The notes under the pieces were generated by a model that was not told the origin of the DNA, searched no databases, and saw only the letters and a list, made by a program, of their open reading frames with translations. From IMG/VR virus record IMGVR_UViG_3300043411_000942, positions 124,001-188,000 of that record: DNA of 64,000 bases, one strand, 5' to 3'. The position numbers and the translations under genes were made by a program. This document shows, one piece after another, positions 9,619 to 26,872 of this stretch. Positions within the stretch are counted from its first letter, which is position 1. Every line of letters begins with the position of its first letter.

Positions 9619-9691
9619 GTGAGGTATCTAGGCTGGTGCTTAGCCCTTCTTGACAAGAAGGTGTTGGAGGGTTCGATCCCCTCACCTCACA
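9619..9691 (+). tRNA. tRNA-Val(GAC)
   Basis: GTGAGGT/ACCTCAC, CCTTC-TTGACAA-GAAGG. Confidence 0.82.
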
Positions 9692-10518
9692 CCTAGCTTC
9701 TTATCTCTACCGTCAGGTAGATTCGTGACTCCTCGCCTTAGGAGATGTTTACGAACTGCATTATCTGAAACCCCAAGAGACTTTGCCACCGCCATGAAGG
9801 ATGATTTACGTAGCTGCGCCAGTAACTCTTCTATAGATGGCCACACAATTACAGTAGGGCCCATCATCATCCGATGACTGGAGTTGCAATCGTGACAGCA
9901 GGCGCTGTGTGGGGATTTAATTTTGTCGCAGTTTGGGCAAACTAGACCCTTCCACGTAGCTACCTTAGTCTTGACACTACAGGGACCACAATGTCGAGAT
10001 TTCTTACTAACAGCTACTTTCTGACATAACTCACAAAACCTAGGCGGTAGCTTAAGTTTTCTTCCTGCGAAGGTGGGTGTCTGAGAGTGACAGTTGGGAC
10101 ATAGTAACCGTAGGTTGTCAATACGGTTATCGTCGTGAGATCCGTTGATGTGATCAAGTTGCAACGAAAGTGGTGCCCCTAACCATTCGGTTAATCCGCA
10201 TACCTTACACTGGTAGGCTAGAAAGCCTTCCCTCACAAGCTGCACCTTCAAACTTTGAGTGTTAGAGTAGAGGCTATTTTCGACTAGGATGGCCGTGAGT
10301 GGGATTTTTTTACTCCGCTTATGTGTTCCCCCTTTCATGTGCCCCTGACCAGTCCAATGGGTAGTGTCTAGTTGTAACTTCTTAATCTTGACCTTCGCCG
10401 TAGTGTAGTTACCCCCTGTAGCTTTCAACCCAAGTGCTCTGAGTACTTGAGCCATAGTGAGACTGGATCTGACAGCTTCAATGAAGTCTGTTTCTGTATA
10501 TGGTGTGGGTTGGACCAT
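9682..10518 (-). CDS. HNH homing endonuclease with Cys-rich repeats and C-terminal HTH
   Basis: LQLDHINGSHDDNRIDNLRLLCPNCHSQT; likely start MVQPT at 10518. Confidence 0.88.
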   Translation of the reverse strand: MVQPTPYTETDFIEAVRSSLTMAQVLRALGLKATGGNYTTAKVKIKKLQLDTTHWTGQGHMKGGTHKRSKKIPLTAILVENSLYSNTQSLKVQLVREGFLAYQCKVCGLTEWLGAPLSLQLDHINGSHDDNRIDNLRLLCPNCHSQTPTFAGRKLKLPPRFCELCQKVAVSKKSRHCGPCSVKTKVATWKGLVCPNCDKIKSPHSACCHDCNSSHRMMMGPTVIVWPSIEELLAQLRKSSFMAVAKSLGVSDNAVRKHLLRRGVTNLPDGRDKKLGVR

Positions 10519-10573
10519 CTGAACCCTCTCTGTAGTAGACGTACAATGTAGGGGGTATAAGTAGAAAACTGAA

Positions 10574-10655
10574 GCGCGAGTGGTGGAATGGCATACACAG
10601 GACACTCAAAAAGTCCCCCGAAAGGATAAGGGTTCAAGTCCCTTCTCGCGCACCA
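10574..10655 (+). tRNA. tRNA-Leu(CAA)
   Basis: GCGCGAG/CTCGCGC-A-CCA, CT-CAA-AA. Confidence 0.9.
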
Positions 10656-10816
10656 TAGAGAGTACCAATCCTGTCAGGCAGGGGTAATCTCTAGTTCAAC
10701 CTTGAACCTGGATATAGGGGTTGGACCTTAGGTGGGAGGTAGGCAATATCTCCCACCTAAGGCGTTTCTCTCAACTCGACTCGCTTGAAGCGAGTCACTC
10801 ACGAGACATAAATCAG

Positions 10817-12703
10817 ATGAACAAAGAAAATCTAGGCCCAGCAGAGCGCATTCTGCAAACGTTGCTTCAGTACACGGATCATGCTGTCCACAACCGACCA
10901 GGGTACACCGTAAAGGACACCTCTGTTGTCGGAGTGAAGTGGCAACCTGTCACTCACAAGGTAGAGGGTGACGAGAAGGTAGTTTACACTCTCTCGAAGG
11001 TGGGCAAGAAGACTGTCCGTACGAGGTTGGGTGTCCTTCAGCCGGACAATCGAATCACGGGCCCTAGGGGGGCCTTGATTGGGGAGTACCGACCAGCCGG
11101 TCTGTTCCCTGAGGTCGTGACCTGGATGTACCGTCAGGTCACGGAGGTGTGGAAGCTGGATAACGAGTTCGCTGCCCGTTGGGCGAGCTACGCTTTCAAG
11201 CAAGAGCATCGAGACCTGAAGGTCATCCTGGCAGCCCTGATGCTTGTACAGTCCCGTAAGGGAGATCCTGTTCTGGATCAAGGCAAGGTAGCCTTCTACG
11301 ATGAAGACTTCCGAGACGTTGGAGAGGCCATGTTGCTGCTCCATGACAAGGACAACAAGGCTGGGTTGAACCCCAAGCTACTTCTTCGTGTCCAGGAGAT
11401 TCTGACCCTTCCTGGAGTGGTTGCAATCAACCGAGAGCTTGGTTTCTCTCGATCCCTACGTAACCCGGCTCTGGGTCGTTGGCCCAAGGCTGTAACTAAG
11501 TGGCTTCGGTTCCGAGAGGAAAACCCCAAGCTGCTTGCAGGACTCGTTAAGGCTGGATTCAAGTCCACCGTAATGGAGTTGGCACGTAAGGTAGGGTACA
11601 AGCCGGAGTCTTCAAAGTTCTTTGAGGCTCTTCGGTGGAAGCAGGGACAAGCCAAGGACGGTCACCGTTCAATTGCCATTGGGCAAGCGGTAACCGCTGC
11701 GGAATCCTGGAATGGTCTGACTGAAGAGCAAGTCTGTCAAAAGATTGCGTCTACTCGACCTAACTGGAAGCGGATCGTAGGTCTTCTTCCCAAGGAGGTT
11801 GGAGTTACCCGAGCAATCGTGGCTGTAGCGATTGAGTCTGGGTCGTTTAGCGACAAGGACTTGATCATTGCAACCCCGACGCTGGAGGAGCTTGGTCTCC
11901 TGGATGTTCAGGACATTCGAGCCCGCTGGGTTCGAGCCACGAAAGAGGCGGATGACATGCGTGCGGCGAACATTGCCACACGAGTCAAGAGCCAAGCGAC
12001 CAAGGAAGTTCTACAGGATGCTGCGGACACAGCAATCAAGAAGGTTGTAGAGCAGGTCATGAAGGGGATTCGAATCTACTTCATGGTTGACATCTCGGGA
12101 TCGATGGAAGGCGCTATTGAGTCCGCAAAGGGCTACATCGGTAAGTTCCTTCAGGCGTTCCCGAAAGACAAGGTCCATGTGAGCGTGTTCAATACTTCTG
12201 GGCGAGAAGTCCAAATCCCACACGCGTCAGCGGCTGGGGTGGAGAATGCGTTCAAGGGCATTAGGGCAGGAGGCGGTACGGACTATGGGGCTGGCGTTCG
12301 AGCCCTCATGAAGTTCAAGCCTCAGGCTGACGAGGATGTCATCTTCTTCTTCGTGGGAGATGAAGAGGCGAGTGAGTTTTCGACTGCGGTTAGAGATTCT
12401 GGCCTTTCTCCAGTTGCTTTCGGATTTGTAAAGGTTCGAGCAACTACTGGAGCTGGGGCTTGGAGAGCTACACAGTACGAAACTTCGGCAGTACGAGACA
12501 CTGCAACGAACTTGGGAGTTCCTTGCTTCATGGTGGACGCAAATACGTTTGACGACCCCTACGCAATTCCACGTACGATGCGGAATCTCATCTCAGCTAC
12601 CCCTGTTGGTGTAGCTCGTAAGCAGACCGAGACCACGCGAGTGGGTCTTGTGGACCTGATTCTAAAGACCGATATCATGCAGAAGCCGACTTGGGCTTCG
12701 TGA
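10817..12703 (+). CDS. helical (Ro60/TROVE-like) domain plus C-terminal vWA domain protein
   Basis: vWA MIDAS VDISGSM, AGGGTDYG, VGDE; ~410 aa basic helical N-terminus; TROVE assignment is inference; start ATG 10817. Confidence 0.75.
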   Translation: MNKENLGPAERILQTLLQYTDHAVHNRPGYTVKDTSVVGVKWQPVTHKVEGDEKVVYTLSKVGKKTVRTRLGVLQPDNRITGPRGALIGEYRPAGLFPEVVTWMYRQVTEVWKLDNEFAARWASYAFKQEHRDLKVILAALMLVQSRKGDPVLDQGKVAFYDEDFRDVGEAMLLLHDKDNKAGLNPKLLLRVQEILTLPGVVAINRELGFSRSLRNPALGRWPKAVTKWLRFREENPKLLAGLVKAGFKSTVMELARKVGYKPESSKFFEALRWKQGQAKDGHRSIAIGQAVTAAESWNGLTEEQVCQKIASTRPNWKRIVGLLPKEVGVTRAIVAVAIESGSFSDKDLIIATPTLEELGLLDVQDIRARWVRATKEADDMRAANIATRVKSQATKEVLQDAADTAIKKVVEQVMKGIRIYFMVDISGSMEGAIESAKGYIGKFLQAFPKDKVHVSVFNTSGREVQIPHASAAGVENAFKGIRAGGGTDYGAGVRALMKFKPQADEDVIFFFVGDEEASEFSTAVRDSGLSPVAFGFVKVRATTGAGAWRATQYETSAVRDTATNLGVPCFMVDANTFDDPYAIPRTMRNLISATPVGVARKQTETTRVGLVDLILKTDIMQKPTWAS

Positions 12704-12717
12704 AAGAGTAGAGCGCC

Positions 12718-13680
12718 ATGGGGTGGAGAGACTTGCTTCCAGAAAAAGAGGAGACTGTAATCTTCCCTTGGGTTGGAGGTAGGTCTCTTCGCTCCGGCTC
12801 TCGTACTTGGAAAATTCAAGGTGCGCTACCAGACGAGCATGGATGGTATGCGTTTCGGATAGTGGGGCGTAATGCCACTCTAGGTGGACCTAGTGGTCCC
12901 GTAGTTGGGATGCTCGATCCTTACAAGGATGTTGGTTACCTAGTAGGGGACCACTTTGTATCTGACTCAATCCAGGCTCAGAGTACTACTCAGGCGTTGC
13001 GCCAGATGAGCCCAGTGGGGCTAGTTGAGCCAGGACTAGATCGGTTCGCTAGGGTCTCCGTAGGGCGAGCGTTTGAGGGCGGCCCTCTTATCTACATGGG
13101 ACTAGAGTTCCCTTTGGGCCCGGAGGAGCAAGTCCTTCAAATGTTCCTAGACCAAGCTCCAACCGTTCGTGAAGTCAAAGGAGTTACTCCAGCGCTCGAA
13201 GCTGCCTTTCAAGTGGAAACTTGGCAACGTCTGGAAACAGAGAGGTTGCGAGTAGAAGCAAACGAGCGTCGCCGATTGGCGGAGGAGCAACGACGTAAGG
13301 AAGAGCAACGTCAACAGATTTTGAACCAGCTTGGGGACGCAGTTGGTCGCCGTCAAATGGCTCAACTCGACTTTGCAGAAGCTGCAAAAGCCTCCCTTGC
13401 GGTAGGGGGCGCTACTTACCTAGACCATCGTAGAGCCGTCACGAGAGGTGAGATGGTTGTAAGGTTCCGGTACATGGACCGTAGGTTCGAATGTGTGTGC
13501 GACGAGAAGACACTACAGATCATTGACTCTGGAGTGTGCCTTACTGCACACAATGATGATGATGGGTTTGACGAGGGAGTGAAAGGAGACCGTTTCTTTA
13601 CTCTTGAGTCCCTGCCATCCGTGTTGAAGGAAGCTCAGGATCTTGGCCGTCTTGTGGTGTATAGGCACGTAGATGGCTAA
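12718..13680 (+). CDS. conserved protein, possible E2-like C-terminal domain
   Basis: Coiled coil followed by IIDSGVCL...TLESLPSVL, reminiscent of the E2 GxxCL catalytic segment; lies in a Ubl operon. Confidence 0.5.
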   Translation: MGWRDLLPEKEETVIFPWVGGRSLRSGSRTWKIQGALPDEHGWYAFRIVGRNATLGGPSGPVVGMLDPYKDVGYLVGDHFVSDSIQAQSTTQALRQMSPVGLVEPGLDRFARVSVGRAFEGGPLIYMGLEFPLGPEEQVLQMFLDQAPTVREVKGVTPALEAAFQVETWQRLETERLRVEANERRRLAEEQRRKEEQRQQILNQLGDAVGRRQMAQLDFAEAAKASLAVGGATYLDHRRAVTRGEMVVRFRYMDRRFECVCDEKTLQIIDSGVCLTAHNDDDGFDEGVKGDRFFTLESLPSVLKEAQDLGRLVVYRHVDG

Positions 13681-14239
13681 CGAAAAAGACCGCTCAGTTT
13701 GGGTTTTCAGGCTGAGTAACGATCCAGTAGGTGTGCGCCCCATCGAGGATGAAGTGCGCCCCATCGAGGATGAAGTCGCGGACGCACTGCAACGACAGGA
13801 CAAAGCCCTCATGGCTAGCAGAGAAGAAGAGCACGTCTCAGCTGTCCCAATCTATGGGGCTCCACTCTACGTGATGCCCGCCAAGGTACCCGTAGGTACT
13901 GGATTTGCAGACCCAGCTTACGAAGAAGAAGTCAACATAAACGTCTCAGCCGTTTCAGCCTATGGCGGGGCTCCACCTTTAGATGATGATCATGACTACG
14001 AGTTTGACGTCTGCTTGGAAGACTACTCTCAAGCCACCCTTACAAAGGTGGTCCAAGTTGTACGTAGGGTGCTCCCCATGGACCTAGCGAAGGCTGTTAC
14101 TCTAGTAAAGAGCACTCCTGTGGTTTTAGCCTCTAAGGTTAGCATCTCAGATGCTTTGGAGCTTGAGTCAGAGTTCACTAAGGTTGGAGCGCAAGTACGA
14201 GTTGTAAACTCGTACACCAAAGAGGTGGTACGAGCATGA
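13673..14239 (+). CDS. ribosomal protein L7/L12 C-terminal domain protein
   Basis: EFDVCLED...KVVQVVRRVLPMDLAKAVTLVKSTPVVL...VSISDALELESEFTKVGAQV. Confidence 0.78.
   Translation: MANEKDRSVWVFRLSNDPVGVRPIEDEVRPIEDEVADALQRQDKALMASREEEHVSAVPIYGAPLYVMPAKVPVGTGFADPAYEEEVNINVSAVSAYGGAPPLDDDHDYEFDVCLEDYSQATLTKVVQVVRRVLPMDLAKAVTLVKSTPVVLASKVSISDALELESEFTKVGAQVRVVNSYTKEVVRA
13733..13774 (+). repeat. perfect 21-nt tandem duplication (VRPIEDE x2)
   Basis: GTGCGCCCCATCGAGGATGAA twice. Confidence 0.9.
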
Positions 14240-14703
14240 GCATAGAAACAGGAGTGGTGGTAAACCTTCAAGGGGAGCCGATTCACTGGCACCTCCCACC
14301 AGGACGGTCTGCTGGGTACCTACCGGATAGTAGAGACCTTTGGGATGTGTTCTGGGAGAATCGTGACAACCTACTCGGGTTTGCACACAGCCACCCAGGG
14401 GCAGGCTACCCTCACCCTTCTCACGAAGATCTTACAACCTTCTCAGCGGTAGAAGCTGGCTTGGGTCGAAGGTTGCTTTGGTGGGTTATGAGTAAGACCT
14501 CGGTAGTGGTGTATAGCTGGGTCGGTCCTGGTTTGTACGACTACCGAGTGAACTCTGACCGAGAGGCTAAGTATGAGAGTGGGGACAGCTCAAGCCAACA
14601 GGAACTAAGTTGGGTTGCGAGGTTGTACTCTCTATCTTACCTAAACAATGAGGGTAGTCCAGAGATGGACTACATGAACGTAGACCTTGGCGGAGATAGA
14701 TAA
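14236..14703 (+). CDS. JAB/JAMM metallopeptidase
   Basis: N-terminal E, then HSHPGAGYPHPSHED (HxH-x-S-xx-D motif). Confidence 0.9.
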   Translation: MSIETGVVVNLQGEPIHWHLPPGRSAGYLPDSRDLWDVFWENRDNLLGFAHSHPGAGYPHPSHEDLTTFSAVEAGLGRRLLWWVMSKTSVVVYSWVGPGLYDYRVNSDREAKYESGDSSSQQELSWVARLYSLSYLNNEGSPEMDYMNVDLGGDR

Positions 14704-14715
14704 GGGGAATTCAAA

Positions 14716-14973
14716 ATGGAAGCAAATGAAGCACGAGTGAATGTTACTTACGCAGGTGCAAACGGAGACCTGCCCGACCCTGTATCGTTTGATGCAGCGG
14801 ACGGAGACATCAAGCAGTGGGTCACTGAGTCTGTAAGGACCGGGGGAATCCCAGGGATTCCTGCCACGGCAACGGCCAACTTCGCAGACTTTGTGGTGGA
14901 CCGGTTCACGGCGAACGAAGCAAGGCCTTACAATGCAATTTTCTTGAGGCCGAAAACCCCATTTGGAGTCTAG
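14716..14973 (+). CDS. ubiquitin-like beta-grasp protein (Ubl)
   Basis: 85 aa ending IFLRPKTPFG-V; lies between JAB and E1 genes. Confidence 0.72.
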   Translation: MEANEARVNVTYAGANGDLPDPVSFDAADGDIKQWVTESVRTGGIPGIPATATANFADFVVDRFTANEARPYNAIFLRPKTPFGV

Positions 14974-14996
14974 TTCTAGTTGACACTCAAGCGGCT

Positions 14997-15218
14997 TTGG
15001 TGAGGCCATTCTTACCAGAGTGTTTTCTCTATAAGATTCAACATGTTAGCCACATTAAGCCCAACCCTTGGTGGCAGCGCTCCCGAAAGCTAACCCCTGA
15101 AGCTGTTCGGGTTATCCGGGCTAGCGGAGCGTCACTCTCGAAGTTGGCTAAAACCTACTCTGTCTCCCGTAGGGTGGTCCAACTGGTCCGTGCTGGGGAG
15201 ACTTACCAAGACGTGTAA
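14997..15218 (+). CDS. small HTH protein (homing-endonuclease C-terminal type)
   Basis: KLTPEAVRVIRASGASLSKLAKTYSVSRRVVQLVRAGETY, similar to the C-terminus of 59136-60236. Confidence 0.55.
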   Translation: MVRPFLPECFLYKIQHVSHIKPNPWWQRSRKLTPEAVRVIRASGASLSKLAKTYSVSRRVVQLVRAGETYQDV

Positions 15219-15272
15219 AAACTCGTTAAAGGTTCCCGTCCTTGGTACGTAAGGTTAGGTAAGGTAGCCAAC

Positions 15273-15506
15273 ATGAACTTCCAGACCCTTACGACTCGAT
15301 TGAAGACAATCGGGGAGATTGTGGAGCCAGCCAACGGACCTAAGGTAGGGGATTCTTACCTAGACCTTCACACTTCCTCAGAGGGAGTAATCTGGAAGGT
15401 CATGGAGGTTGACTGGGTTCACGACACCGTCAAGCTGAAAGGCTTGAAAGGCCATGTTGAGTGGGCTGGGTACTACTCAGTTCTCAACTTGATGAGAAAA
15501 CTCTGA
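15273..15506 (+). CDS. hypothetical protein
   Basis: 77 aa ORF after a promoter motif; TGATG-coupled to E1. Confidence 0.6.
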   Translation: MNFQTLTTRLKTIGEIVEPANGPKVGDSYLDLHTSSEGVIWKVMEVDWVHDTVKLKGLKGHVEWAGYYSVLNLMRKL

Positions 15507-16081
15507 TGAAAAACATAGTAGTAGTGGGAGTAGGGGCTCTTGGTTCACACCTTGTCCCTCTACTCCGTAACCTGGACGCAACTGTAAAGGTTGTGGACTT
15601 TGACCGAGTAGAGACAAAGAACACGATGTCTCAGTTCCACGCAAAGTCTTCTGTCGGTAAGTCGAAGGTTCAAGCCCTTCAAGCTACCATGCAGTTCTTG
15701 TGGGGCGTAAAGCTGCAAGTCATACCCCACAAGCTTACTACAGACAACCAAGAGCAGCTCCTTGGAGGAGCAGACCTTCTTGTCGACTGCCTAGACAACG
15801 GCCCTTCCAGGAGACTTGTACAGGACTATGCGAAGCGTAAAGGTGTCCCATGCCTACATGGGGCGTTAGCAGCGGATGGTTCGTTTGGTAGGGTAATCTG
15901 GACAGAGTCCTTTACCATCGATGAGGCTCCTGGAGTTGGTACTCCAACCTGTGAGAACGGAGAGCACCTAGCGTTCATCTCCATCGTGGCCTCCTATCTA
16001 GCTCAGGTTACCAGTGCTTTTCTTGCTACTGGTACCAAGTTGGGGTATAGTGTTCATGCAGGTGGTGCGGTTAGGACGTAG
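15506..16081 (+). CDS. ThiF/E1-like Ubl-activating adenylyltransferase
   Basis: GVGALG, VDFDRVETKN, GKSKV, VDCLDN, single Cys in PTCE. Confidence 0.9.
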   Translation: MKNIVVVGVGALGSHLVPLLRNLDATVKVVDFDRVETKNTMSQFHAKSSVGKSKVQALQATMQFLWGVKLQVIPHKLTTDNQEQLLGGADLLVDCLDNGPSRRLVQDYAKRKGVPCLHGALAADGSFGRVIWTESFTIDEAPGVGTPTCENGEHLAFISIVASYLAQVTSAFLATGTKLGYSVHAGGAVRT

Positions 16082-16149
16082 GAAAAATCGCACGCTTAGC
16101 AAAAGAAAATCTTGCCCGCCCTCTACTCCTGGTGTAGAGGTACTTAACA

Positions 16150-16207
16150 GGAAGAGGTGACCTAATCGGTAGGTACCTCAGGCTGGTTCGAATCCACCCT
16201 CTTCCCC
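16150..16207 (+). ncRNA. anticodon-armless tRNA-like RNA
   Basis: GGAAGAGG/CCTCTTCC, D arm ACCT-AATCGGT-AGGT, TTCGAAT loop, no anticodon arm. Confidence 0.6.
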
Positions 16208-16208
16208 T

Positions 16209-16341
16209 GCTTCTGTCTACTACCTGAATCTTACAAGCAATGTTGGTTCGAATCCAACTGCCCCTTCGGGGGTATGGCGGAATGGAAAACGCAATCACCC
16301 GATAAGTGATCAATACCCAGATTCAGGACTCAGTCAGAAGC
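16209..16341 (+). ncRNA. Y RNA (YrlA)-like permuted tRNA mimic #1
   Basis: GCTTCTG/CAGAAGC and CCTGAATCT/AGATTCAGG enclose T arm, UUCG-capped acceptor hairpin, then D arm. Confidence 0.78.
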
Positions 16342-16348
16342 TACTTTC

Positions 16349-16476
16349 GCCGCATATGACTCCAGGTGGGGTCACTCCCGTTTAAAGGAATAAACCGACA
16401 CTCCGCTCTCAATCCTCGCAAGAGGGTTAACTTGAAGTGTCTACAAGAATGGTTGGTTCGAGTCCAACATGCGGCA
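16349..16476 (+). ncRNA. tRNA-like RNA #2 with inserted motif stem
   Basis: GCCGCAT/ATGCGGC acceptor, T arm; GACACT...AGTGTC insert carries the shared internal loop. Confidence 0.7.
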
Positions 16477-16478
16477 CT

Positions 16479-16600
16479 AGAGACGGTTACTACGAGGTGT
16501 TTACAAGCATAGTCCAATGGTAGGACATCAGCCCTGATAGCTGACTGTATAGGTTCAATTCCTATTGCAATCAATCCAACACCTCAACTCAATCGTCTCT
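16479..16600 (+). ncRNA. tRNA-like RNA #3 nested in motif stem
   Basis: AGAGACG/CGTCTCT and GAGGTGTT/AACACCTC enclose D, anticodon-like and T arms. Confidence 0.75.
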
Positions 16601-16705
16601 TATATCTATGTTACCATTCAAGATTACCTCTATCTTGCTCTAGGTCGTGTGGTGCAAAGTTAGGAGCAGTGCAGAAAAACCGTATCGTTGCTACTTAGTT
16701 ACTTA

Positions 16706-16836
16706 GCCGGACATAGAGGGTGGGTCCCCTCATTCGTAATGAAGCACGAAAAGCACCAGCATCTCTTCTCGCCCTCTTTACCGAGGGTTCTCTGAGATGC
16801 TTACAAGAAATCTTGGTTCGAGTCCAAGGTCCGGCG
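16706..16836 (+). ncRNA. tRNA-like RNA #4 with inserted motif stem
   Basis: GCCGGAC/GTCCGGC, T arm CTTGG-TTCGAGT-CCAAG, AGCATCTC/GAGATGCT insert. Confidence 0.7.
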
Positions 16837-16838
16837 CT

Positions 16839-16967
16839 AGAGCGATCACTCTGGGATGTTTACACGCTAAAATTGCTCAACTGGTAGAGCAGCCGCCTCA
16901 TAAGCAGCATGTTGCTGGTTCAAGTCCAGCTTTCAGCATCAAAACAACATCCAATCTCGATCGCTCT
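16839..16967 (+). ncRNA. RNA #5: whole tRNA(CAT) cloverleaf (16866-16938) nested in motif stem
   Basis: AGAGCGATC/GATCGCTCT and GGATGTT/AACATCC flank the cloverleaf. Confidence 0.75.
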
Positions 16968-16975
16968 TACTACTT

Positions 16976-17060
16976 GGAATGGAAACCTATCGGGGATAGG
17001 CTTGGTTTTGAAAACCAAAGGAGCGAGAAATCGCCTGGGGGTCGGGACCTCTTCATTCCT
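16976..17060 (+). tRNA. tRNA-Ser(TGA), 8/4 fold
   Basis: GGAATGGA/TTCATTCC, T stem GGGG/CCTC, long variable arm. Confidence 0.82.
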
Positions 17061-17065
17061 CTCTT

Positions 17066-17148
17066 GCGTGGGTGGCGAAATGGCAGACGCAGTAGATTCA
17101 AAATCTACCACCCTTAGAAGTGTACGGGTTCAAGTCCCGTCCCACGCA
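17066..17148 (+). tRNA. tRNA-Leu(CAA)
   Basis: GTAGA-TTCAAAA-TCTAC. Confidence 0.92.
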
Positions 17149-17161
17149 CCGAGGTGACTTC

Positions 17162-17410
17162 ATGGAGCCTGTAAAGAAGGTACACGGTATCGGGTACGCC
17201 TCTCAACCTGATCATCAATTCCGATGCGACGGTAAATGGGGACAGCCTGCATGGGCTGGAGCTAATCAGAGCATGGGGTCGGATGGTCGTATCCGAGATG
17301 GCTCAGGGGAGCCTCTCACTCCAGAGCGTGTGTATCTATCAGATGAAGACGACCGACTCTTCTCGTTTGATGAGTCCCTCGTCACATGTGAAGCTTGTCT
17401 CGGTAAGTAG
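17162..17410 (+). CDS. hypothetical protein
   Basis: GAGGT RBS, ATG 17162, C-terminal VTCEAC. Confidence 0.6.
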   Translation: MEPVKKVHGIGYASQPDHQFRCDGKWGQPAWAGANQSMGSDGRIRDGSGEPLTPERVYLSDEDDRLFSFDESLVTCEACLGK

Positions 17411-17433
17411 GGTAGGGTTTGATTGTGTGTAAT

Positions 17434-17514
17434 GCGAACGTGGTGGAATGGCAGACACGCCAGACTAAGGATCTGGTGCCGTAAGGTGTGAGAGTTCAAG
17501 TCTCTCCGTTCGCA
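17434..17514 (+). tRNA. tRNA-Leu(AAG)
   Basis: GCGAACG/CGTTCGC-A, CCAGA-CTAAGGA-TCTGG, long variable arm. Confidence 0.92.
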
Positions 17515-17526
17515 CTAGGTGTTTCA

Positions 17527-17712
17527 ATGAAGCTGATAGCTGCTATGGTTTTGAGTGACGAAGGAAAACTGCTTCCGTATACGTGCCAGAGTTCCATGTC
17601 TGCTTGCGAAGAGGAAGCAGCTGTAACTCTTCCTTGGTACAGGATGAAAGCACTCGGGGCTAAGGTGGTTCAAGTCGAAATCCGCACCTTAGATTCGCCA
17701 GAAACCGAATAA
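17527..17712 (+). CDS. hypothetical protein
   Basis: AGGT RBS, ATG 17527. Confidence 0.55.
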   Translation: MKLIAAMVLSDEGKLLPYTCQSSMSACEEEAAVTLPWYRMKALGAKVVQVEIRTLDSPETE

Positions 17713-17714
17713 TT

Positions 17715-17801
17715 GGGTTGGTAATCCGTTAGGAACGGAGCCAGTTTCGAAAACTGTGCAGGTCCCGAAAGGGGTCAGGGGTTCGAGTCCTCACCTTCCC
17801 G
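17715..17801 (+). tRNA. tRNA-Ser(CGA), 8/4 fold
   Basis: CAGT-TTCGAAA-ACTG, long variable arm, G73. Confidence 0.8.
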
Positions 17802-17882
17802 CTGGTTGTCCGAGAACCTCATCTCGGAATTAGGTTCCGCCAGTAAGCCTAGAGGGATAAGATCCTTGAAACCTGGCCTCTT

Positions 17883-17967
17883 GGAAGGTGAATCGATCAG
17901 GGATCGGCGCGACTTGGAAAGTCGTTGGGGCTCGAAAGGGTCTGGAGGTCGGGACTTCCTCCTTCCG
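17883..17967 (+). tRNA. tRNA-Ser(GGA), 8/4 fold
   Basis: GCGAC-TTGGAAA-GTCGT, G73. Confidence 0.82.
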
Positions 17968-18595
17968 CTTTAGGTTTTACGCGCCTATCAGGCCTTCCTC
18001 GGCCTTTGTTCAGTGCCCCATAGGTCGGAGTCAGTGAGTGGCAATTAGGGCATAGGAGGCGTAAGTTCTGTTCCGAACTATTGCTCCAATCCCCGTCTAT
18101 GTGGTCAACATGTAGAGGCACCTTTTTGGTGGTTGGGTTTACCCGCGACCAGTTACACTCAGAGCACTTTGAGCTATACTTCTCGAAAAGGTAATGGCGT
18201 ACTCGATACGAGACTGAGGCCCCCTTTATACCCCCTGAGACACTACCGTTCCTCCAGAGCACAATAAATTCTCTGTACTTACCCTCCCAATGGGCGGGTA
18301 CACACTTTTTGGAGCAGTATTGCCGGTCCTCTTTGAAGTGGGTCCTACAAGTAGGGCACTCCTTCTCTTTAGCTCTACCTTTCCCTTGGTCCTTGACTCC
18401 GCCCTTAGGCTTTAGTTGTCGACATACCTCGCAGTATGTCCAGTAAGACCGAATGGGTGCGCTACATACCTTGCACTTGTTCTTGAGCTTTATTTTCGGG
18501 CTTATTGAGTTGTTGTGGCTGTTGGCACAGCTTCTAGAGCAGAACTTGAGGTTACTCGAAAGTGAACCACATACGGGACATACTATTTGACTCAT
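17897..18595 (-). CDS. HNH homing endonuclease
   Basis: Cys-rich N-terminus; LHVDHIDGDWSNSSEQNLRLLCPNCHSLT; 3' end antisense to tRNA-Ser(GGA). Confidence 0.88.
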   Translation of the reverse strand: MSQIVCPVCGSLSSNLKFCSRSCANSHNNSISPKIKLKNKCKVCSAPIRSYWTYCEVCRQLKPKGGVKDQGKGRAKEKECPTCRTHFKEDRQYCSKKCVPAHWEGKYREFIVLWRNGSVSGGIKGASVSYRVRHYLFEKYSSKCSECNWSRVNPTTKKVPLHVDHIDGDWSNSSEQNLRLLCPNCHSLTPTYGALNKGRGRPDRRVKPKAEGGSPDLQTLSSPNDFPSRADP

Positions 18596-26644: not shown

Positions 26645-26872
26645 ATGGACATCACGAAGATCACTTGCAGCCAAGCAGCGAAACTCCTCTACTTCACGGA
26701 GAACGGCACGGATAAGCCTACGCGGGAGATTGCCTTCACCCTGGCTGCGTTTGGCGAGGTCCCGCTTCCTGAGGTCCTTGTGGAGCGGTACGATTGGGAG
26801 CGCATGAACTCAAACTTTGAGCGGCAAGTTCAAAGGGACTCGCAAATGCGAGCTGCGGAAGGTACTCCGTGA
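26645..26872 (+). CDS. hypothetical protein
   Basis: ATG 8 nt after promoter motif. Confidence 0.65.
   Translation: MDITKITCSQAAKLLYFTENGTDKPTREIAFTLAAFGEVPLPEVLVERYDWERMNSNFERQVQRDSQMRAAEGTP

What the first reader, a model, noticed from the sequence alone, without database searches (positions are those of the whole stretch)
10764..10816. The same RNA motif sits in the 5' leader of the Ro/vWA gene (possible autoregulation)
Seen: GTTTCTCTCA-ACTCGAC-TCGC-TTGAA-GCGA-GTCACTC-ACGAGAC ends 10 nt before ATG 10817. It carries both motif halves (ACTCGAC and GTCACTC) in the hairpin-closed topology of RNAs #2 and #4. Inference: the protein represses its own translation and is titrated by the RNA array. 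This independently links the protein to the RNAs 5.5 kb downstream.
Basis: partly seen in the sequence, partly recalled or inferred. Interest (0 to 1): 0.75.

Follow-up and report, generated by a model that had tools for sequence, protein, structure and literature searches.

The report
Y-RNA-like operator before phage Ro gene
Just upstream of a very divergent Ro60-like gene in a huge phage sits a small RNA stem-loop that copies the conserved stem of the tRNA-like RNAs encoded nearby; about a quarter of related phages have it too, which suggests the protein controls its own translation by binding a mimic of its RNA partners.

Summary
The two exact 7-mers are not a repeated motif. What the leader shares with the array is a degenerate structural module:
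- an outer helix;
- a 5-nt strand ending in CUC;
- a hairpin that opens with G-C;
- a 5-6-nt strand starting with A (AC in the consensus);
- the outer helix again.

I built a covariance model (R3) from 25 array modules of 15 other phages, using no leaders and nothing from this window. Its results:
- It scores this leader at 11.7 bits, rank 3 in the 64-kb window. E is 0.002 for the intergenic stretch and 0.75 for the whole window.
- It finds the same module just upstream of the homologous gene in 13 other loci, so 14 of 59 non-redundant loci (12.0-23.6 bits).
- Only 3 hits that strong lie outside arrays and leaders, in about 631 kb searched without filters.

The hairpin ends 14-30 nt before the start codon in 15 of 17 leaders. 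The Shine-Dalgarno sequence lies in or beside the 3' strand of the outer helix.

The 628-aa protein has no Pfam TROVE hit, but its AlphaFold model matches Ro60 over its whole length.

Autogenous translational repression with titration by the RNA array is the best reading. It remains inferred. Narrower models scored the leader at background, and most homologues lack the element.

The parts
10768..10807 (+). Leader module (candidate operator). Outer helix UCUC 10769-10772 pairs with GAGA 10803-10806. 5' loop strand AACUC 10773-10777. Hairpin GACUCGC-UUGAA-GCGAGUC 10778-10796. 3' loop strand ACUCAC 10797-10802.
   Evidence: Sequence and fold. R3 scores it 11.7 bits. The relatives L009 and run X14 show a compensatory C-G to U-A change in the hairpin.
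10803..10819 (+). Ribosome-binding region. GAGA is both Shine-Dalgarno-like and the 3' strand of the outer helix. A 10-nt spacer and ATG 10817 follow.
   Evidence: Sequence. Other genes of this phage use similarly weak purine-rich sites at about -8 to -14. Homologues begin at the same Met.
10817..12703 (+). Gene for a 628-aa divergent Ro60-like protein. It has an extra N-terminal beta domain (about residues 29-92), a helical TROVE-like ring, and a vWA domain with an intact MIDAS motif (D425, S427, S429, T488, D515).
   Evidence: Pfam finds vWA only. AlphaFold2 model has pLDDT 87.5. The top Foldseek full-length hits are all Ro60/TROVE. VIA-align gives Z of about 13.5 over about 420 residues. 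MIDAS residues are invariant.
10726..10762 (+). Strong terminator-like hairpin (16 pairs) directly 5' of the module. Probably not part of the operator.
   Evidence: A related strain in run X14 lacks it but keeps the module.
10574..10655 (+). tRNA-Leu(CAA), the last tRNA before the gene. It bounds the leader.
16210..16340 (+). Array RNA1, 'open' YrlA-like. The terminal helix CUUCUGUCU/AGUCAGAAG and the helix CUGAAUCU/AGAUUCAG flank the loop strands ACUAC (5') and GACUC (3'). Inside lie a T-arm, a loop-closed acceptor-like stem and a D-arm-like hairpin.
   Evidence: Sequence and fold.
16349..16476 (+). Array RNA2, 'closed'. It is tRNA-like (acceptor GCCGCAU/AUGCGGC plus a T-arm), with module 16397-16441 in place of the anticodon arm.
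16480..16599 (+). Array RNA3, 'open'. 5' end GAGACGGUU-ACUAC-GAGGUGUU; 3' end AACACCUC-AACUC-AAUCGUCUC. The two ends enclose a tRNA-like insert (16507-16568).
16706..16836 (+). Array RNA4, 'closed' and tRNA-like. Module 16758-16801 reads AGCAUCUC-UUCUC-GCCCUC..GAGGGU-UCUCU-GAGAUGCU.
   Evidence: Fold. R3 scores it 20.4 bits, the top hit of the window.
16840..16966 (+). Array RNA5, 'open'. 5' end GAGCGAUC-ACUCU-GGGAUGUU; 3' end AACAUCC-AAUCUC-GAUCGCUC. The two ends enclose tRNA-Met 16866-16938.

Best explanation
The element at 10768-10807 is a cis-acting operator in the 5' untranslated leader of the Ro60-like gene. It copies, in hairpin-closed form, the internal-loop module found in the stems of the phage's tRNA-like Y-type RNAs. 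The module is NNCUC, then a helix that opens with G-C, then A(C/U)NNN, closed by an outer helix.

Proposed mechanism, all of it inferred:
- When the Ro-like protein exceeds its RNA partners, it binds the leader module.
- Binding stabilises the outer helix, whose 3' strand is or abuts the Shine-Dalgarno sequence.
- The 30S subunit is kept off a start codon that lies about 20 nt downstream.
- When the array RNAs are abundant, they compete for the protein and translation resumes.

Shown here:
- the module exists;
- it is related to the array modules;
- it recurs at a fixed position before homologous genes;
- the protein has the Ro60 fold.
For: 1. Model R3 was built from 25 array modules of 15 other phages, with no leaders and nothing from this window. 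Covariation on A7, an alignment fitted to the model, gives 90.5% of cells paired against 64% in shuffles, and 11 of 12 pairs change on both sides.
2. R3 scores the leader at 11.7 bits. That is E 0.002 in the 175-nt intergenic stretch and rank 3 in the 64-kb window, behind RNA4's module.
3. R3 finds a module within about 100 nt upstream of the homologous gene in L034 (23.6), L035 (20.4), L057 (18.2), L060 (17.4), L058 (14.9), L045 (14.8), L036 (13.6), L024 (13.5), L007 (13.4), L027 (12.9), L020 (12.8), L048 (12.6) and L009 (12.0).
4. In the filter-off searches, only 3 hits of 11.7 bits or more lie outside arrays and leaders, in about 631 kb. In the unbiased 59-locus scan, 5 leader hits were found where about 0.02 were expected.
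5. A model-free descriptor is met by 9 of 59 leaders against 1% expected (P about 1e-8). CUCG followed by a hairpin occurs in 17 of 59 leaders against 6.5% expected.
6. The module is not a genome-wide motif: 26 generic hits in the 233-kb genome against 23 expected.
7. Position: the hairpin ends 14-30 nt before the start in 15 of 17 leaders, median 22. The Shine-Dalgarno sequence is the 3' strand of the outer helix in L058, L060, L036 and L052, and lies directly 3' of it in L007, L035, L027, L045 and L024.
8. A compensatory C-G to U-A change is seen in close relatives.
9. The protein is Ro60-like by fold. Array modules lie within 8 kb of the gene in at least 31 of 59 loci.
Against: - No binding or expression data exist. 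The public RNA runs are held only as contigs and do not show transcript ends.
- On a whole-window basis the leader score is not significant (E 0.75). One unrelated site scores higher (26722-26765, minus strand, 13.2 bits).
- Two narrower array-derived models scored the leader at background: R1 gave no hit and R2 gave 6.2 bits.
- About three quarters of homologues have no detectable leader module, including five checked with filters off and the only GenBank relative. Any such control is therefore optional.
- The Shine-Dalgarno sequence in this window is weak (GAGA), so the occlusion argument is softer here than in L058 or L060.
- A terminator-like hairpin sits directly 5' of the module and no promoter lies between them, so the origin of the mRNA 5' end is unknown.
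- That the Ro-like protein, rather than another factor, reads the module rests only on co-location.
Confidence: 0.5

Rival explanations
1. The element is a free-standing minimal Y-like RNA, a decoy, or a decayed leftover of an array unit that happens to lie next to the gene. It would be bound by the protein, or by nothing, and would play no part in translation.
For: - Y-like RNAs directly upstream of a phage Ro60 gene are known: Yrl1 and Yrl2 of Thermus phage phiLo (PMC12135203).
- In several relatives whole array units lie 300-1700 nt upstream of the gene.
- The L024 leader flanks are nearly identical to those of its own array modules, as a recent copy would be.
Against: - Leader modules lack the UACAAG box, T-arm and acceptor stem that every array unit has.
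- Their distance to the start codon is tightly constrained: 15 of 17 at 14-30 nt.
- In L058, L060, L036 and L052 the Shine-Dalgarno sequence is part of the module, so the module must be on the mRNA.
- In this window, L009, L024, L035 and L045 the arrays lie 4-7 kb downstream and the leader copy is solitary.
Confidence: 0.2
2. The module is read by a different factor. That factor could be another protein of the same gene cluster, such as the conserved 320-aa product of 12718-13680, or a host or phage RNase. In that case the leader copy would be a processing, stability or operon-control site, not a Ro autoregulatory site.
For: - The link between protein and RNA rests on co-location only.
- The gene follows a tRNA in a co-oriented tRNA-rich region that probably needs processing.
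- A conserved gene of unknown function follows directly.
Against: - The Ro60 fold together with neighbouring tRNA-like RNAs is the defining Ro/Y RNA arrangement (PMC4201824).
- In array RNAs the module replaces the anticodon arm or forms the terminal stem, which is where Ro binds YrlA-type RNAs. It is not at a tRNA boundary.
Confidence: 0.2
3. The resemblance is chance. The element would be an ordinary leader hairpin, or part of a terminator for the upstream tRNA.
For: - The exact 7-mers are at background frequency.
- R1 and R2 scored the leader at background.
- The generic descriptor is expected about 23 times in the genome.
- The window-level E value is 0.75.
Against: - The module recurs in 13 other loci whose leaders are otherwise unalignable, with very few false positives elsewhere.
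- The spacing to the start codon is fixed.
- No U-tract follows the module hairpin; the terminator scan lists only the hairpin upstream of it.
- A compensatory change is seen in close relatives.
Confidence: 0.08

Closest known systems
Autogenous translational control by molecular mimicry. Examples are the E. coli thrS operator, which mimics the tRNA-Thr anticodon arm, and ribosomal-protein operators (L1, S8, L20) that mimic rRNA sites. This comparison rests on established knowledge, not on a test made here.
   Same: - A copy of the protein's primary RNA ligand lies in its own leader.
- The copy overlaps or abuts the ribosome-binding site.
- The abundant structural RNA would compete with the mRNA for the protein.
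   Different: - The protein here is a Ro60-type ring protein and the mimicked ligand is a Y-type or tRNA-like RNA.
- No such circuit turned up for Ro60 in three full-text searches.
- Binding and repression are untested.
Bacterial and phage Ro60 (Rsr) with YrlA-type Y RNAs (Chen et al. 2014, PMC4201824)
   Same: - The protein has the ring-plus-vWA fold.
- tRNA-like RNAs are encoded within a few kb on the same strand.
- The protein-binding stem emerges where the anticodon arm would be.
- An RtcB ligase gene lies nearby in a relative.
   Different: - Pfam TROVE is not detected, and identity to solved Ro60 structures is about 13%.
- The GNCGAAN0-1G motif is absent.
- No Rfam family other than tRNA-type models matches the array, and none matches the leader.
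- The conserved feature is a CUC/AC internal loop instead.
- Half of the RNAs are circularly permuted: true tRNA-like ends with the module closed by a loop.
- A leader copy has not been described for YrlA systems.
Thermus phage phiLo Ro60 with Yrl1 and Yrl2 (PMC12135203; PDB 9KOP, 9L5Y)
   Same: - It is a phage-encoded Ro60 and among the best structural matches.
- Small Ro-binding RNAs are encoded directly upstream of the gene.
   Different: - The phiLo RNAs carry a CGAA motif and are described as separate noncoding RNAs that recruit PNPase.
- Here the upstream element is a bare 40-nt module that overlaps the ribosome-binding region.

Membership tests
Ro60 / TROVE protein family | TROVE domain recognisable by sequence (Pfam PF05731) | tested here: not met
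   Pfam gave no hit at E<=10 on residues 1-428 and none on the full protein. Distant homologues also lack it. The six-frame genome search found nothing. A profile against PDB sequences hits only the vWA part.
Ro60 / TROVE protein family | Helical (HEAT-repeat) ring followed by a vWA domain in three dimensions | tested here: met
   The AlphaFold2 model has pLDDT 87.5. The twelve best Foldseek hits are all Ro60/TROVE chains aligned over about 480-570 columns (E 4e-8 to 8e-6, TM 0.33-0.52). VIA-align gives Z of about 13.5 over 416-426 residues, model residues 11-595. Only Ro60 chains align beyond the vWA domain.
Ro60 / TROVE protein family | vWA domain with a MIDAS motif | tested here: met
   Pfam VWA_2 E 2.7e-9. 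D425, S427 and S429 are invariant and T488 and D515 nearly invariant in 41 homologues.
Ro60 / TROVE protein family | Binds Y-type RNAs | not testable with these tools
   Complex prediction does not fold protein-RNA jobs. Only co-location is shown.
YrlA / Y RNA family (array RNAs and leader) | GNCGAAN0-1G Ro-binding motif near the 5' end (PMC4201824) | tested here: not met
   A regular-expression search of 10656-10816 and 16100-17000 found none. CGAA occurs only in two T-loops and at 16747.
YrlA / Y RNA family (array RNAs and leader) | Match to an Rfam Y-type RNA model | tested here: not met
   Within the array and its flanks, (E<=10 on 10000-18500) list only tRNA-type models and weak chance-level matches to plastid UTR families on the opposite strand. 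Nothing matches 10764-10816.
YrlA / Y RNA family (array RNAs and leader) | tRNA-like domain (T-arm, D-arm, acceptor-like stem) joined to a protein-binding stem | tested here: met
   Met for array RNAs 1-5 (folds; partial tRNA hit 16507-16568; GGUUCGANUCC T-loops). Not met for the leader element, which is the stem module alone.
Autogenous translational operator (mimicry type) | The operator resembles the protein's main RNA ligand | tested here: met
   R3, built from arrays only, scores 14 of 59 leaders at 11.7-23.6 bits. This assumes the array module is the ligand, which is unproven.
Autogenous translational operator (mimicry type) | The operator overlaps or abuts the ribosome-binding site | tested here: met
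   The hairpin ends 14-30 nt before the start in 15 of 17 leaders. The Shine-Dalgarno sequence lies within or directly 3' of the outer helix.
Autogenous translational operator (mimicry type) | The protein represses its own translation and its main RNA ligand relieves the repression | not testable with these tools
   This needs reporter and binding assays.
Intrinsic terminator | G+C-rich hairpin followed by a U-tract | tested here: not met
   The scan lists hairpin 10726-10762 but not the module hairpin, which is followed by ACUCACGAGAC.

The most novel reading that the evidence does not exclude
A large, unannotated lineage of huge phages encodes a Ro60 so divergent that sequence profiles miss it. 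Alongside it are two circularly permuted classes of tRNA-like Y RNAs that share a new CUC/AC internal-loop recognition module. In about a quarter of these phages the protein also autoregulates its translation through a copy of that module overlapping its ribosome-binding site. As far as my literature searches show, that would be the first Ro60 autoregulatory circuit and a new cis-regulatory RNA class.
Probability: 0.4. Interest if true: 0.8.

Novelty: new variant of a known kind. Interest (0 to 1): 0.66.

Why it matters
Ro60 and Y RNAs occur from bacteria to humans, and Ro60 is a major autoantigen. How cells or viruses set the ratio of Ro60 to its RNAs is poorly understood.

A leader copy of the RNA module would provide three things:
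- a simple feedback mechanism;
- a compact, testable definition of what this Ro lineage recognises (CUC, a G-C-opened helix, then AC);
- an independent computational link between an unannotated protein family and its RNA partners. The family has more than 1,700 metagenomic homologues, many on 200-660-kb phage contigs.

The finding also points to a Ro/Y RNA system embedded in the tRNA arrays of huge phages.

Tried and rejected
- **Exact 7-mer motifs** (ACTCGAC, GTCACTC): at background frequency and absent from the array modules.
- **R1**: a model built from three near-identical modules found only its own training sequences; there was no leader hit at E<=10.
- **R2**: a model built from four modules with a 4x4 loop gave the leader 6.2 bits and this window's own RNA4 module only 11.5 bits. 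It was too narrow and served only as a seed for R3.
- **MAFFT alignment of 25 modules** (A2): it did not align the hairpins structurally and was not used for a model.
- **Loose structural descriptor**: 162 hits in the window, so uninformative.
- **Leader versus own-array co-variation**: weak overall (P 0.02) and driven by L024 and L016. Not used as evidence.
- **The search for related loci with the 41-sequence alignment**: It was rerun with 18 sequences.
- **Megablast of the gene region against GenBank phages**: no hit. tblastn found only Virus Rctr197k, annotated as hypothetical.
- **Pfam RtcB and TROVE in the window's own 233-kb record**: none.
- **Complex prediction with protein plus leader RNA**: not folded. 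It gives no evidence either way.
- **Read laying on four RNA-type runs**: contigs only, with no transcript ends. It gave only a strain variant.
- **PHROGs**: nothing for the Ro-like protein or its neighbours.

Full report
**Context**

The window is bases 124001-188000 of a 232,937-bp IMG/VR virus record that CheckV estimates to be 49% complete, so it is a huge phage. It carries 39 tRNA hits and a tmRNA on the plus strand. ORF 10817-12703 encodes 628 aa. Pfam recognises only a vWA domain at residues 420-540.

The family is large. More than 1,700 metagenomic homologues were found, many on contigs of 200-660 kb. The 50%-identity library holds 315 representatives. The only GenBank phage relative is annotated as hypothetical. 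I fetched 65 viral loci, 59 of them non-redundant. In most of them the gene lies among tRNA genes.

**Is the protein Ro-like?**

By sequence it is not. There is no TROVE hit in Pfam, in distant homologues, or in a six-frame genome search. A 41-sequence profile matches PDB chains only through the vWA part. That includes the Ro60 vWA domain at the homologous position.

By structure it is. The AlphaFold2 model (pLDDT 87.5) has Ro60/TROVE chains as its twelve best Foldseek matches, aligned over about 480-570 columns. They include D. radiodurans Rsr (2NVO), Xenopus and human Ro60, and Thermus phage phiLo Ro60. VIA-align gives Z of about 13.5 over about 420 residues spanning model residues 11-595. 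Every other chain matches only the vWA domain.

MIDAS residues D425, S427 and S429 are invariant, and T488 and D515 nearly so. An N-terminal beta domain (about residues 29-92) is an addition. A relative has an RtcB ligase gene 4 kb upstream, which recalls bacterial rsr-yrl-rtcBA operons. I call the protein a divergent Ro60-like protein on structural grounds.

**The RNA array**

Region 16210-16966 holds five RNAs.

- RNAs 1, 3 and 5 are 'open'. Their 5' and 3' ends pair into a long stem interrupted by an internal loop, and they enclose a tRNA-like body. In RNA5 the body is an ARAGORN-called tRNA-Met. In RNA1 it has YrlA-like order: T-arm, a loop-closed acceptor-like stem, then a D-arm-like hairpin.
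- RNAs 2 and 4 are 'closed'. They have a 7-bp acceptor stem and a T-arm like a tRNA, but the anticodon arm is replaced by the same kind of stem, capped by a loop.
- In all five, the stem strand that follows the 3' loop strand runs straight into UACA(A/C)G.

Related phages carry the same closed units: CUCG, a hairpin (often with a tetraloop), an A/C-rich strand, a helix, (U)ACAAGC and a T-arm. These lie 4-9 kb downstream or 0.3-1.7 kb upstream of the gene.

These RNAs do not fit the known YrlA family. The GNCGAAN0-1G motif is absent, and in the array Rfam gives only tRNA-type matches plus chance-level hits.

**The observation**

The leader sequence is exactly as reported. Its minimum-free-energy fold pairs UCUC 10769-10772 with GAGA 10803-10806 and forms the hairpin 10778-10796.

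The real similarity lies in the loop:

| RNA | 5' loop strand | 3' loop strand |
|---|---|---|
| Leader | AACUC | ACUCAC |
| RNA1 | GACUC | ACUAC |
| RNA3 | AACUC | ACUAC |
| RNA5 | AAUCUC | ACUCU |
| RNA4 | UUCUC | UCUCU |

In every case the helix after CUC starts with G.

**Covariance-model test**

- **R1** was built from three near-identical modules. It generalised to nothing.
- **R2** was built from four array modules of L007, L042, L056 and L057 that share one geometry. It gave the leader only 6.2 bits and was weak even on this phage's own RNA4.
- **R3** was built from the 25 array hits of R2 in 15 phages. These contained no leaders and no window sequence. On this alignment, which is fitted to the model, 90.5% of cells pair against 64% in shuffles and 34-48% when partners are slid. 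Eleven of 12 pairs change on both sides. The first hairpin pair is G-C in 23 of 25 rows. The consensus is ucugCc-aCUC-GgcCC..GGgcC-ACca-gGcaga.

R3 results:

- In the window, with filters off, RNA4's module ranks first at 20.4 bits. An unexplained minus-strand site ranks second at 13.2 bits. The leader ranks third at 11.7 bits, E 0.75.
- Restricted to the pre-specified intergenic stretch 10656-10830, the leader's E value is 0.002.
- Across all 59 loci with default filters, 5 leaders appear (L034, L057, L060, L058, L048) among about 45 array hits and about 7 stray hits in 2 Mb. About 0.02 leader hits are expected by chance.
- With filters off on ten loci where I had seen a candidate by eye, eight leaders score 12.0-20.4 bits. 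In the first five loci every hit outside arrays and leaders scores 11.4 bits or less.
- With filters off on five loci where I had seen none, no leader hit appears and every top hit lies in an array.

In total 14 of 59 leaders score 11.7 bits or more. Only 3 other sites outside arrays do so, in about 631 kb of filter-off search.

**Model-free checks**

- CUCG directly followed by a hairpin of at least 5 bp occurs in the -110 to -10 region of 17 of 59 leaders, against 6.5% expected.
- A strict descriptor that also requires the outer helix is met by 9 of 59 leaders against 1% expected, binomial P about 1e-8. Related sequences are not fully independent, but apart from the window/L009 pair these leaders are otherwise unalignable.
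- Genome-wide, the generic descriptor is at its expected frequency (26 hits against 23), so this is not a general promoter- or terminator-like signal.
- Close relatives show a compensatory change. The window has GACUCGC/GCGAGUC. L009 and a strain in run X14 have GACUUG(C)/(G)CAAGUC.
- The X14 strain lacks the big hairpin at 10726-10762 but keeps the module.

**Position and mechanism**

In 15 of 17 leaders the hairpin ends 14-30 nt before the predicted start codon, with a median of 22 nt.

The Shine-Dalgarno sequence is itself the 3' strand of the outer helix in L058 (GGAGG), L060 (GGAGG), L036 (GGAGAC) and L052 (CAGGAGG). It follows that strand directly in L007, L035, L027, L045 and L024. In those phages the module must therefore lie on the mRNA.

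In the window the outer-helix strand GAGA lies 10 nt before the ATG. It resembles the weak purine-rich sites of neighbouring genes.

This is the layout of a classical translational operator. I infer that the protein binds the module, locks the outer helix and excludes the 30S subunit, and that the array RNAs compete for the protein. None of these steps is shown.

**Limits**

- Most homologues lack the element.
- The window-level score is modest.
- The assignment of the module to the Ro-like protein rests on co-location.
- The origin of the mRNA 5' end is unknown, because a terminator-like hairpin sits directly upstream.
- The available RNA runs give only contigs.
- Similarity between a leader and its own phage's array is weak overall and striking only in L024.

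**Comparison with known systems**

Functionally the closest parallels are the thrS and ribosomal-protein operators (established knowledge). Phylogenetically the closest is Ro60 with YrlA (PMC4201824). Phage phiLo Ro60 has two Yrl RNAs upstream of its gene, described as separate RNAs (PMC12135203).

Three full-text searches found no report of Ro60 autoregulation through a leader mimic. A jumbo-phage survey notes only that some phages carry a TROVE protein with a tRNA-like partner (PMC7824862).

**Verdict**

The link between gene and array is supported. Autoregulation is the most likely reading but is unproven (confidence 0.5). The case is a new variant of known kinds: mimicry-type autogenous control, and Ro/Y RNA systems.

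Noticed in passing
window 16210-16966: The array alternates two circularly permuted topologies of the same parts. 'Open' RNAs (1, 3, 5) have ends that form the module stem around a tRNA-like body. 'Closed' RNAs (2, 4) have tRNA-like ends and carry the module in place of the anticodon arm. Closed and open units are joined by CUA (16477-16479, 16837-16839). UACA(A/C)G follows the stem in all five.
   Followed up: partly
window 16135-16215; 16976-17059; 17714-17801: Further tRNA-like pieces. The first has an acceptor stem and T-arm but no anticodon arm. The other two are weak tRNA-Sec-like Rfam matches (about 32 bits, below the gathering score of 47).
   Followed up: no
window 10726-10762: A 16-pair terminator-like hairpin lies directly 5' of the module. 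A related strain in metatranscriptome run X14 lacks it but keeps the module.
   Followed up: partly
window 12718-16081: Between the Ro-like gene and the array lie a conserved 320-aa protein with no family, a protein with a ribosomal L7/L12 C-terminal domain (13673-14239), a JAB-type peptidase (14236-14703), three small ORFs and a ThiF/E1-like enzyme (15461-16081). This looks like a ubiquitin-like conjugation set. ThiF also recurs downstream of the gene in L068 and in Virus Rctr197k.
   Followed up: partly
window 13068-13147: ARAGORN calls a tRNA-Ser(AGA) inside ORF 12718-13680, and at the same place in L009 (10270-10349). Rfam does not support it.
   Followed up: no
P0001 residues about 29-92: The model shows an N-terminal beta-rich domain that Ro60 structures lack. 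It is confidently predicted (pLDDT about 80-95).
   Followed up: no
L068 4735-6144: An RtcB RNA ligase gene lies about 4 kb upstream of the Ro-like gene in a relative, recalling bacterial rsr-yrl-rtcBA operons. None was found in this window's 233-kb record.
   Followed up: partly
L024 7951-7989 versus L024 13814-14416: The L024 leader module shares its flanks (CAUCGCACCUCG ... AAACC) almost exactly with three of its own array modules. That suggests a recent copy between array and leader.
   Followed up: partly
window 26722-26765 (minus strand): This site scores 13.2 bits with R3, above the leader. It was not examined.
   Followed up: no
window 9682-10605 (minus strand): An HNH endonuclease ORF on the opposite strand overlaps the 5' end of tRNA-Leu 10574-10655 by about 30 nt as listed. 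Its true start is probably further in.
   Followed up: no
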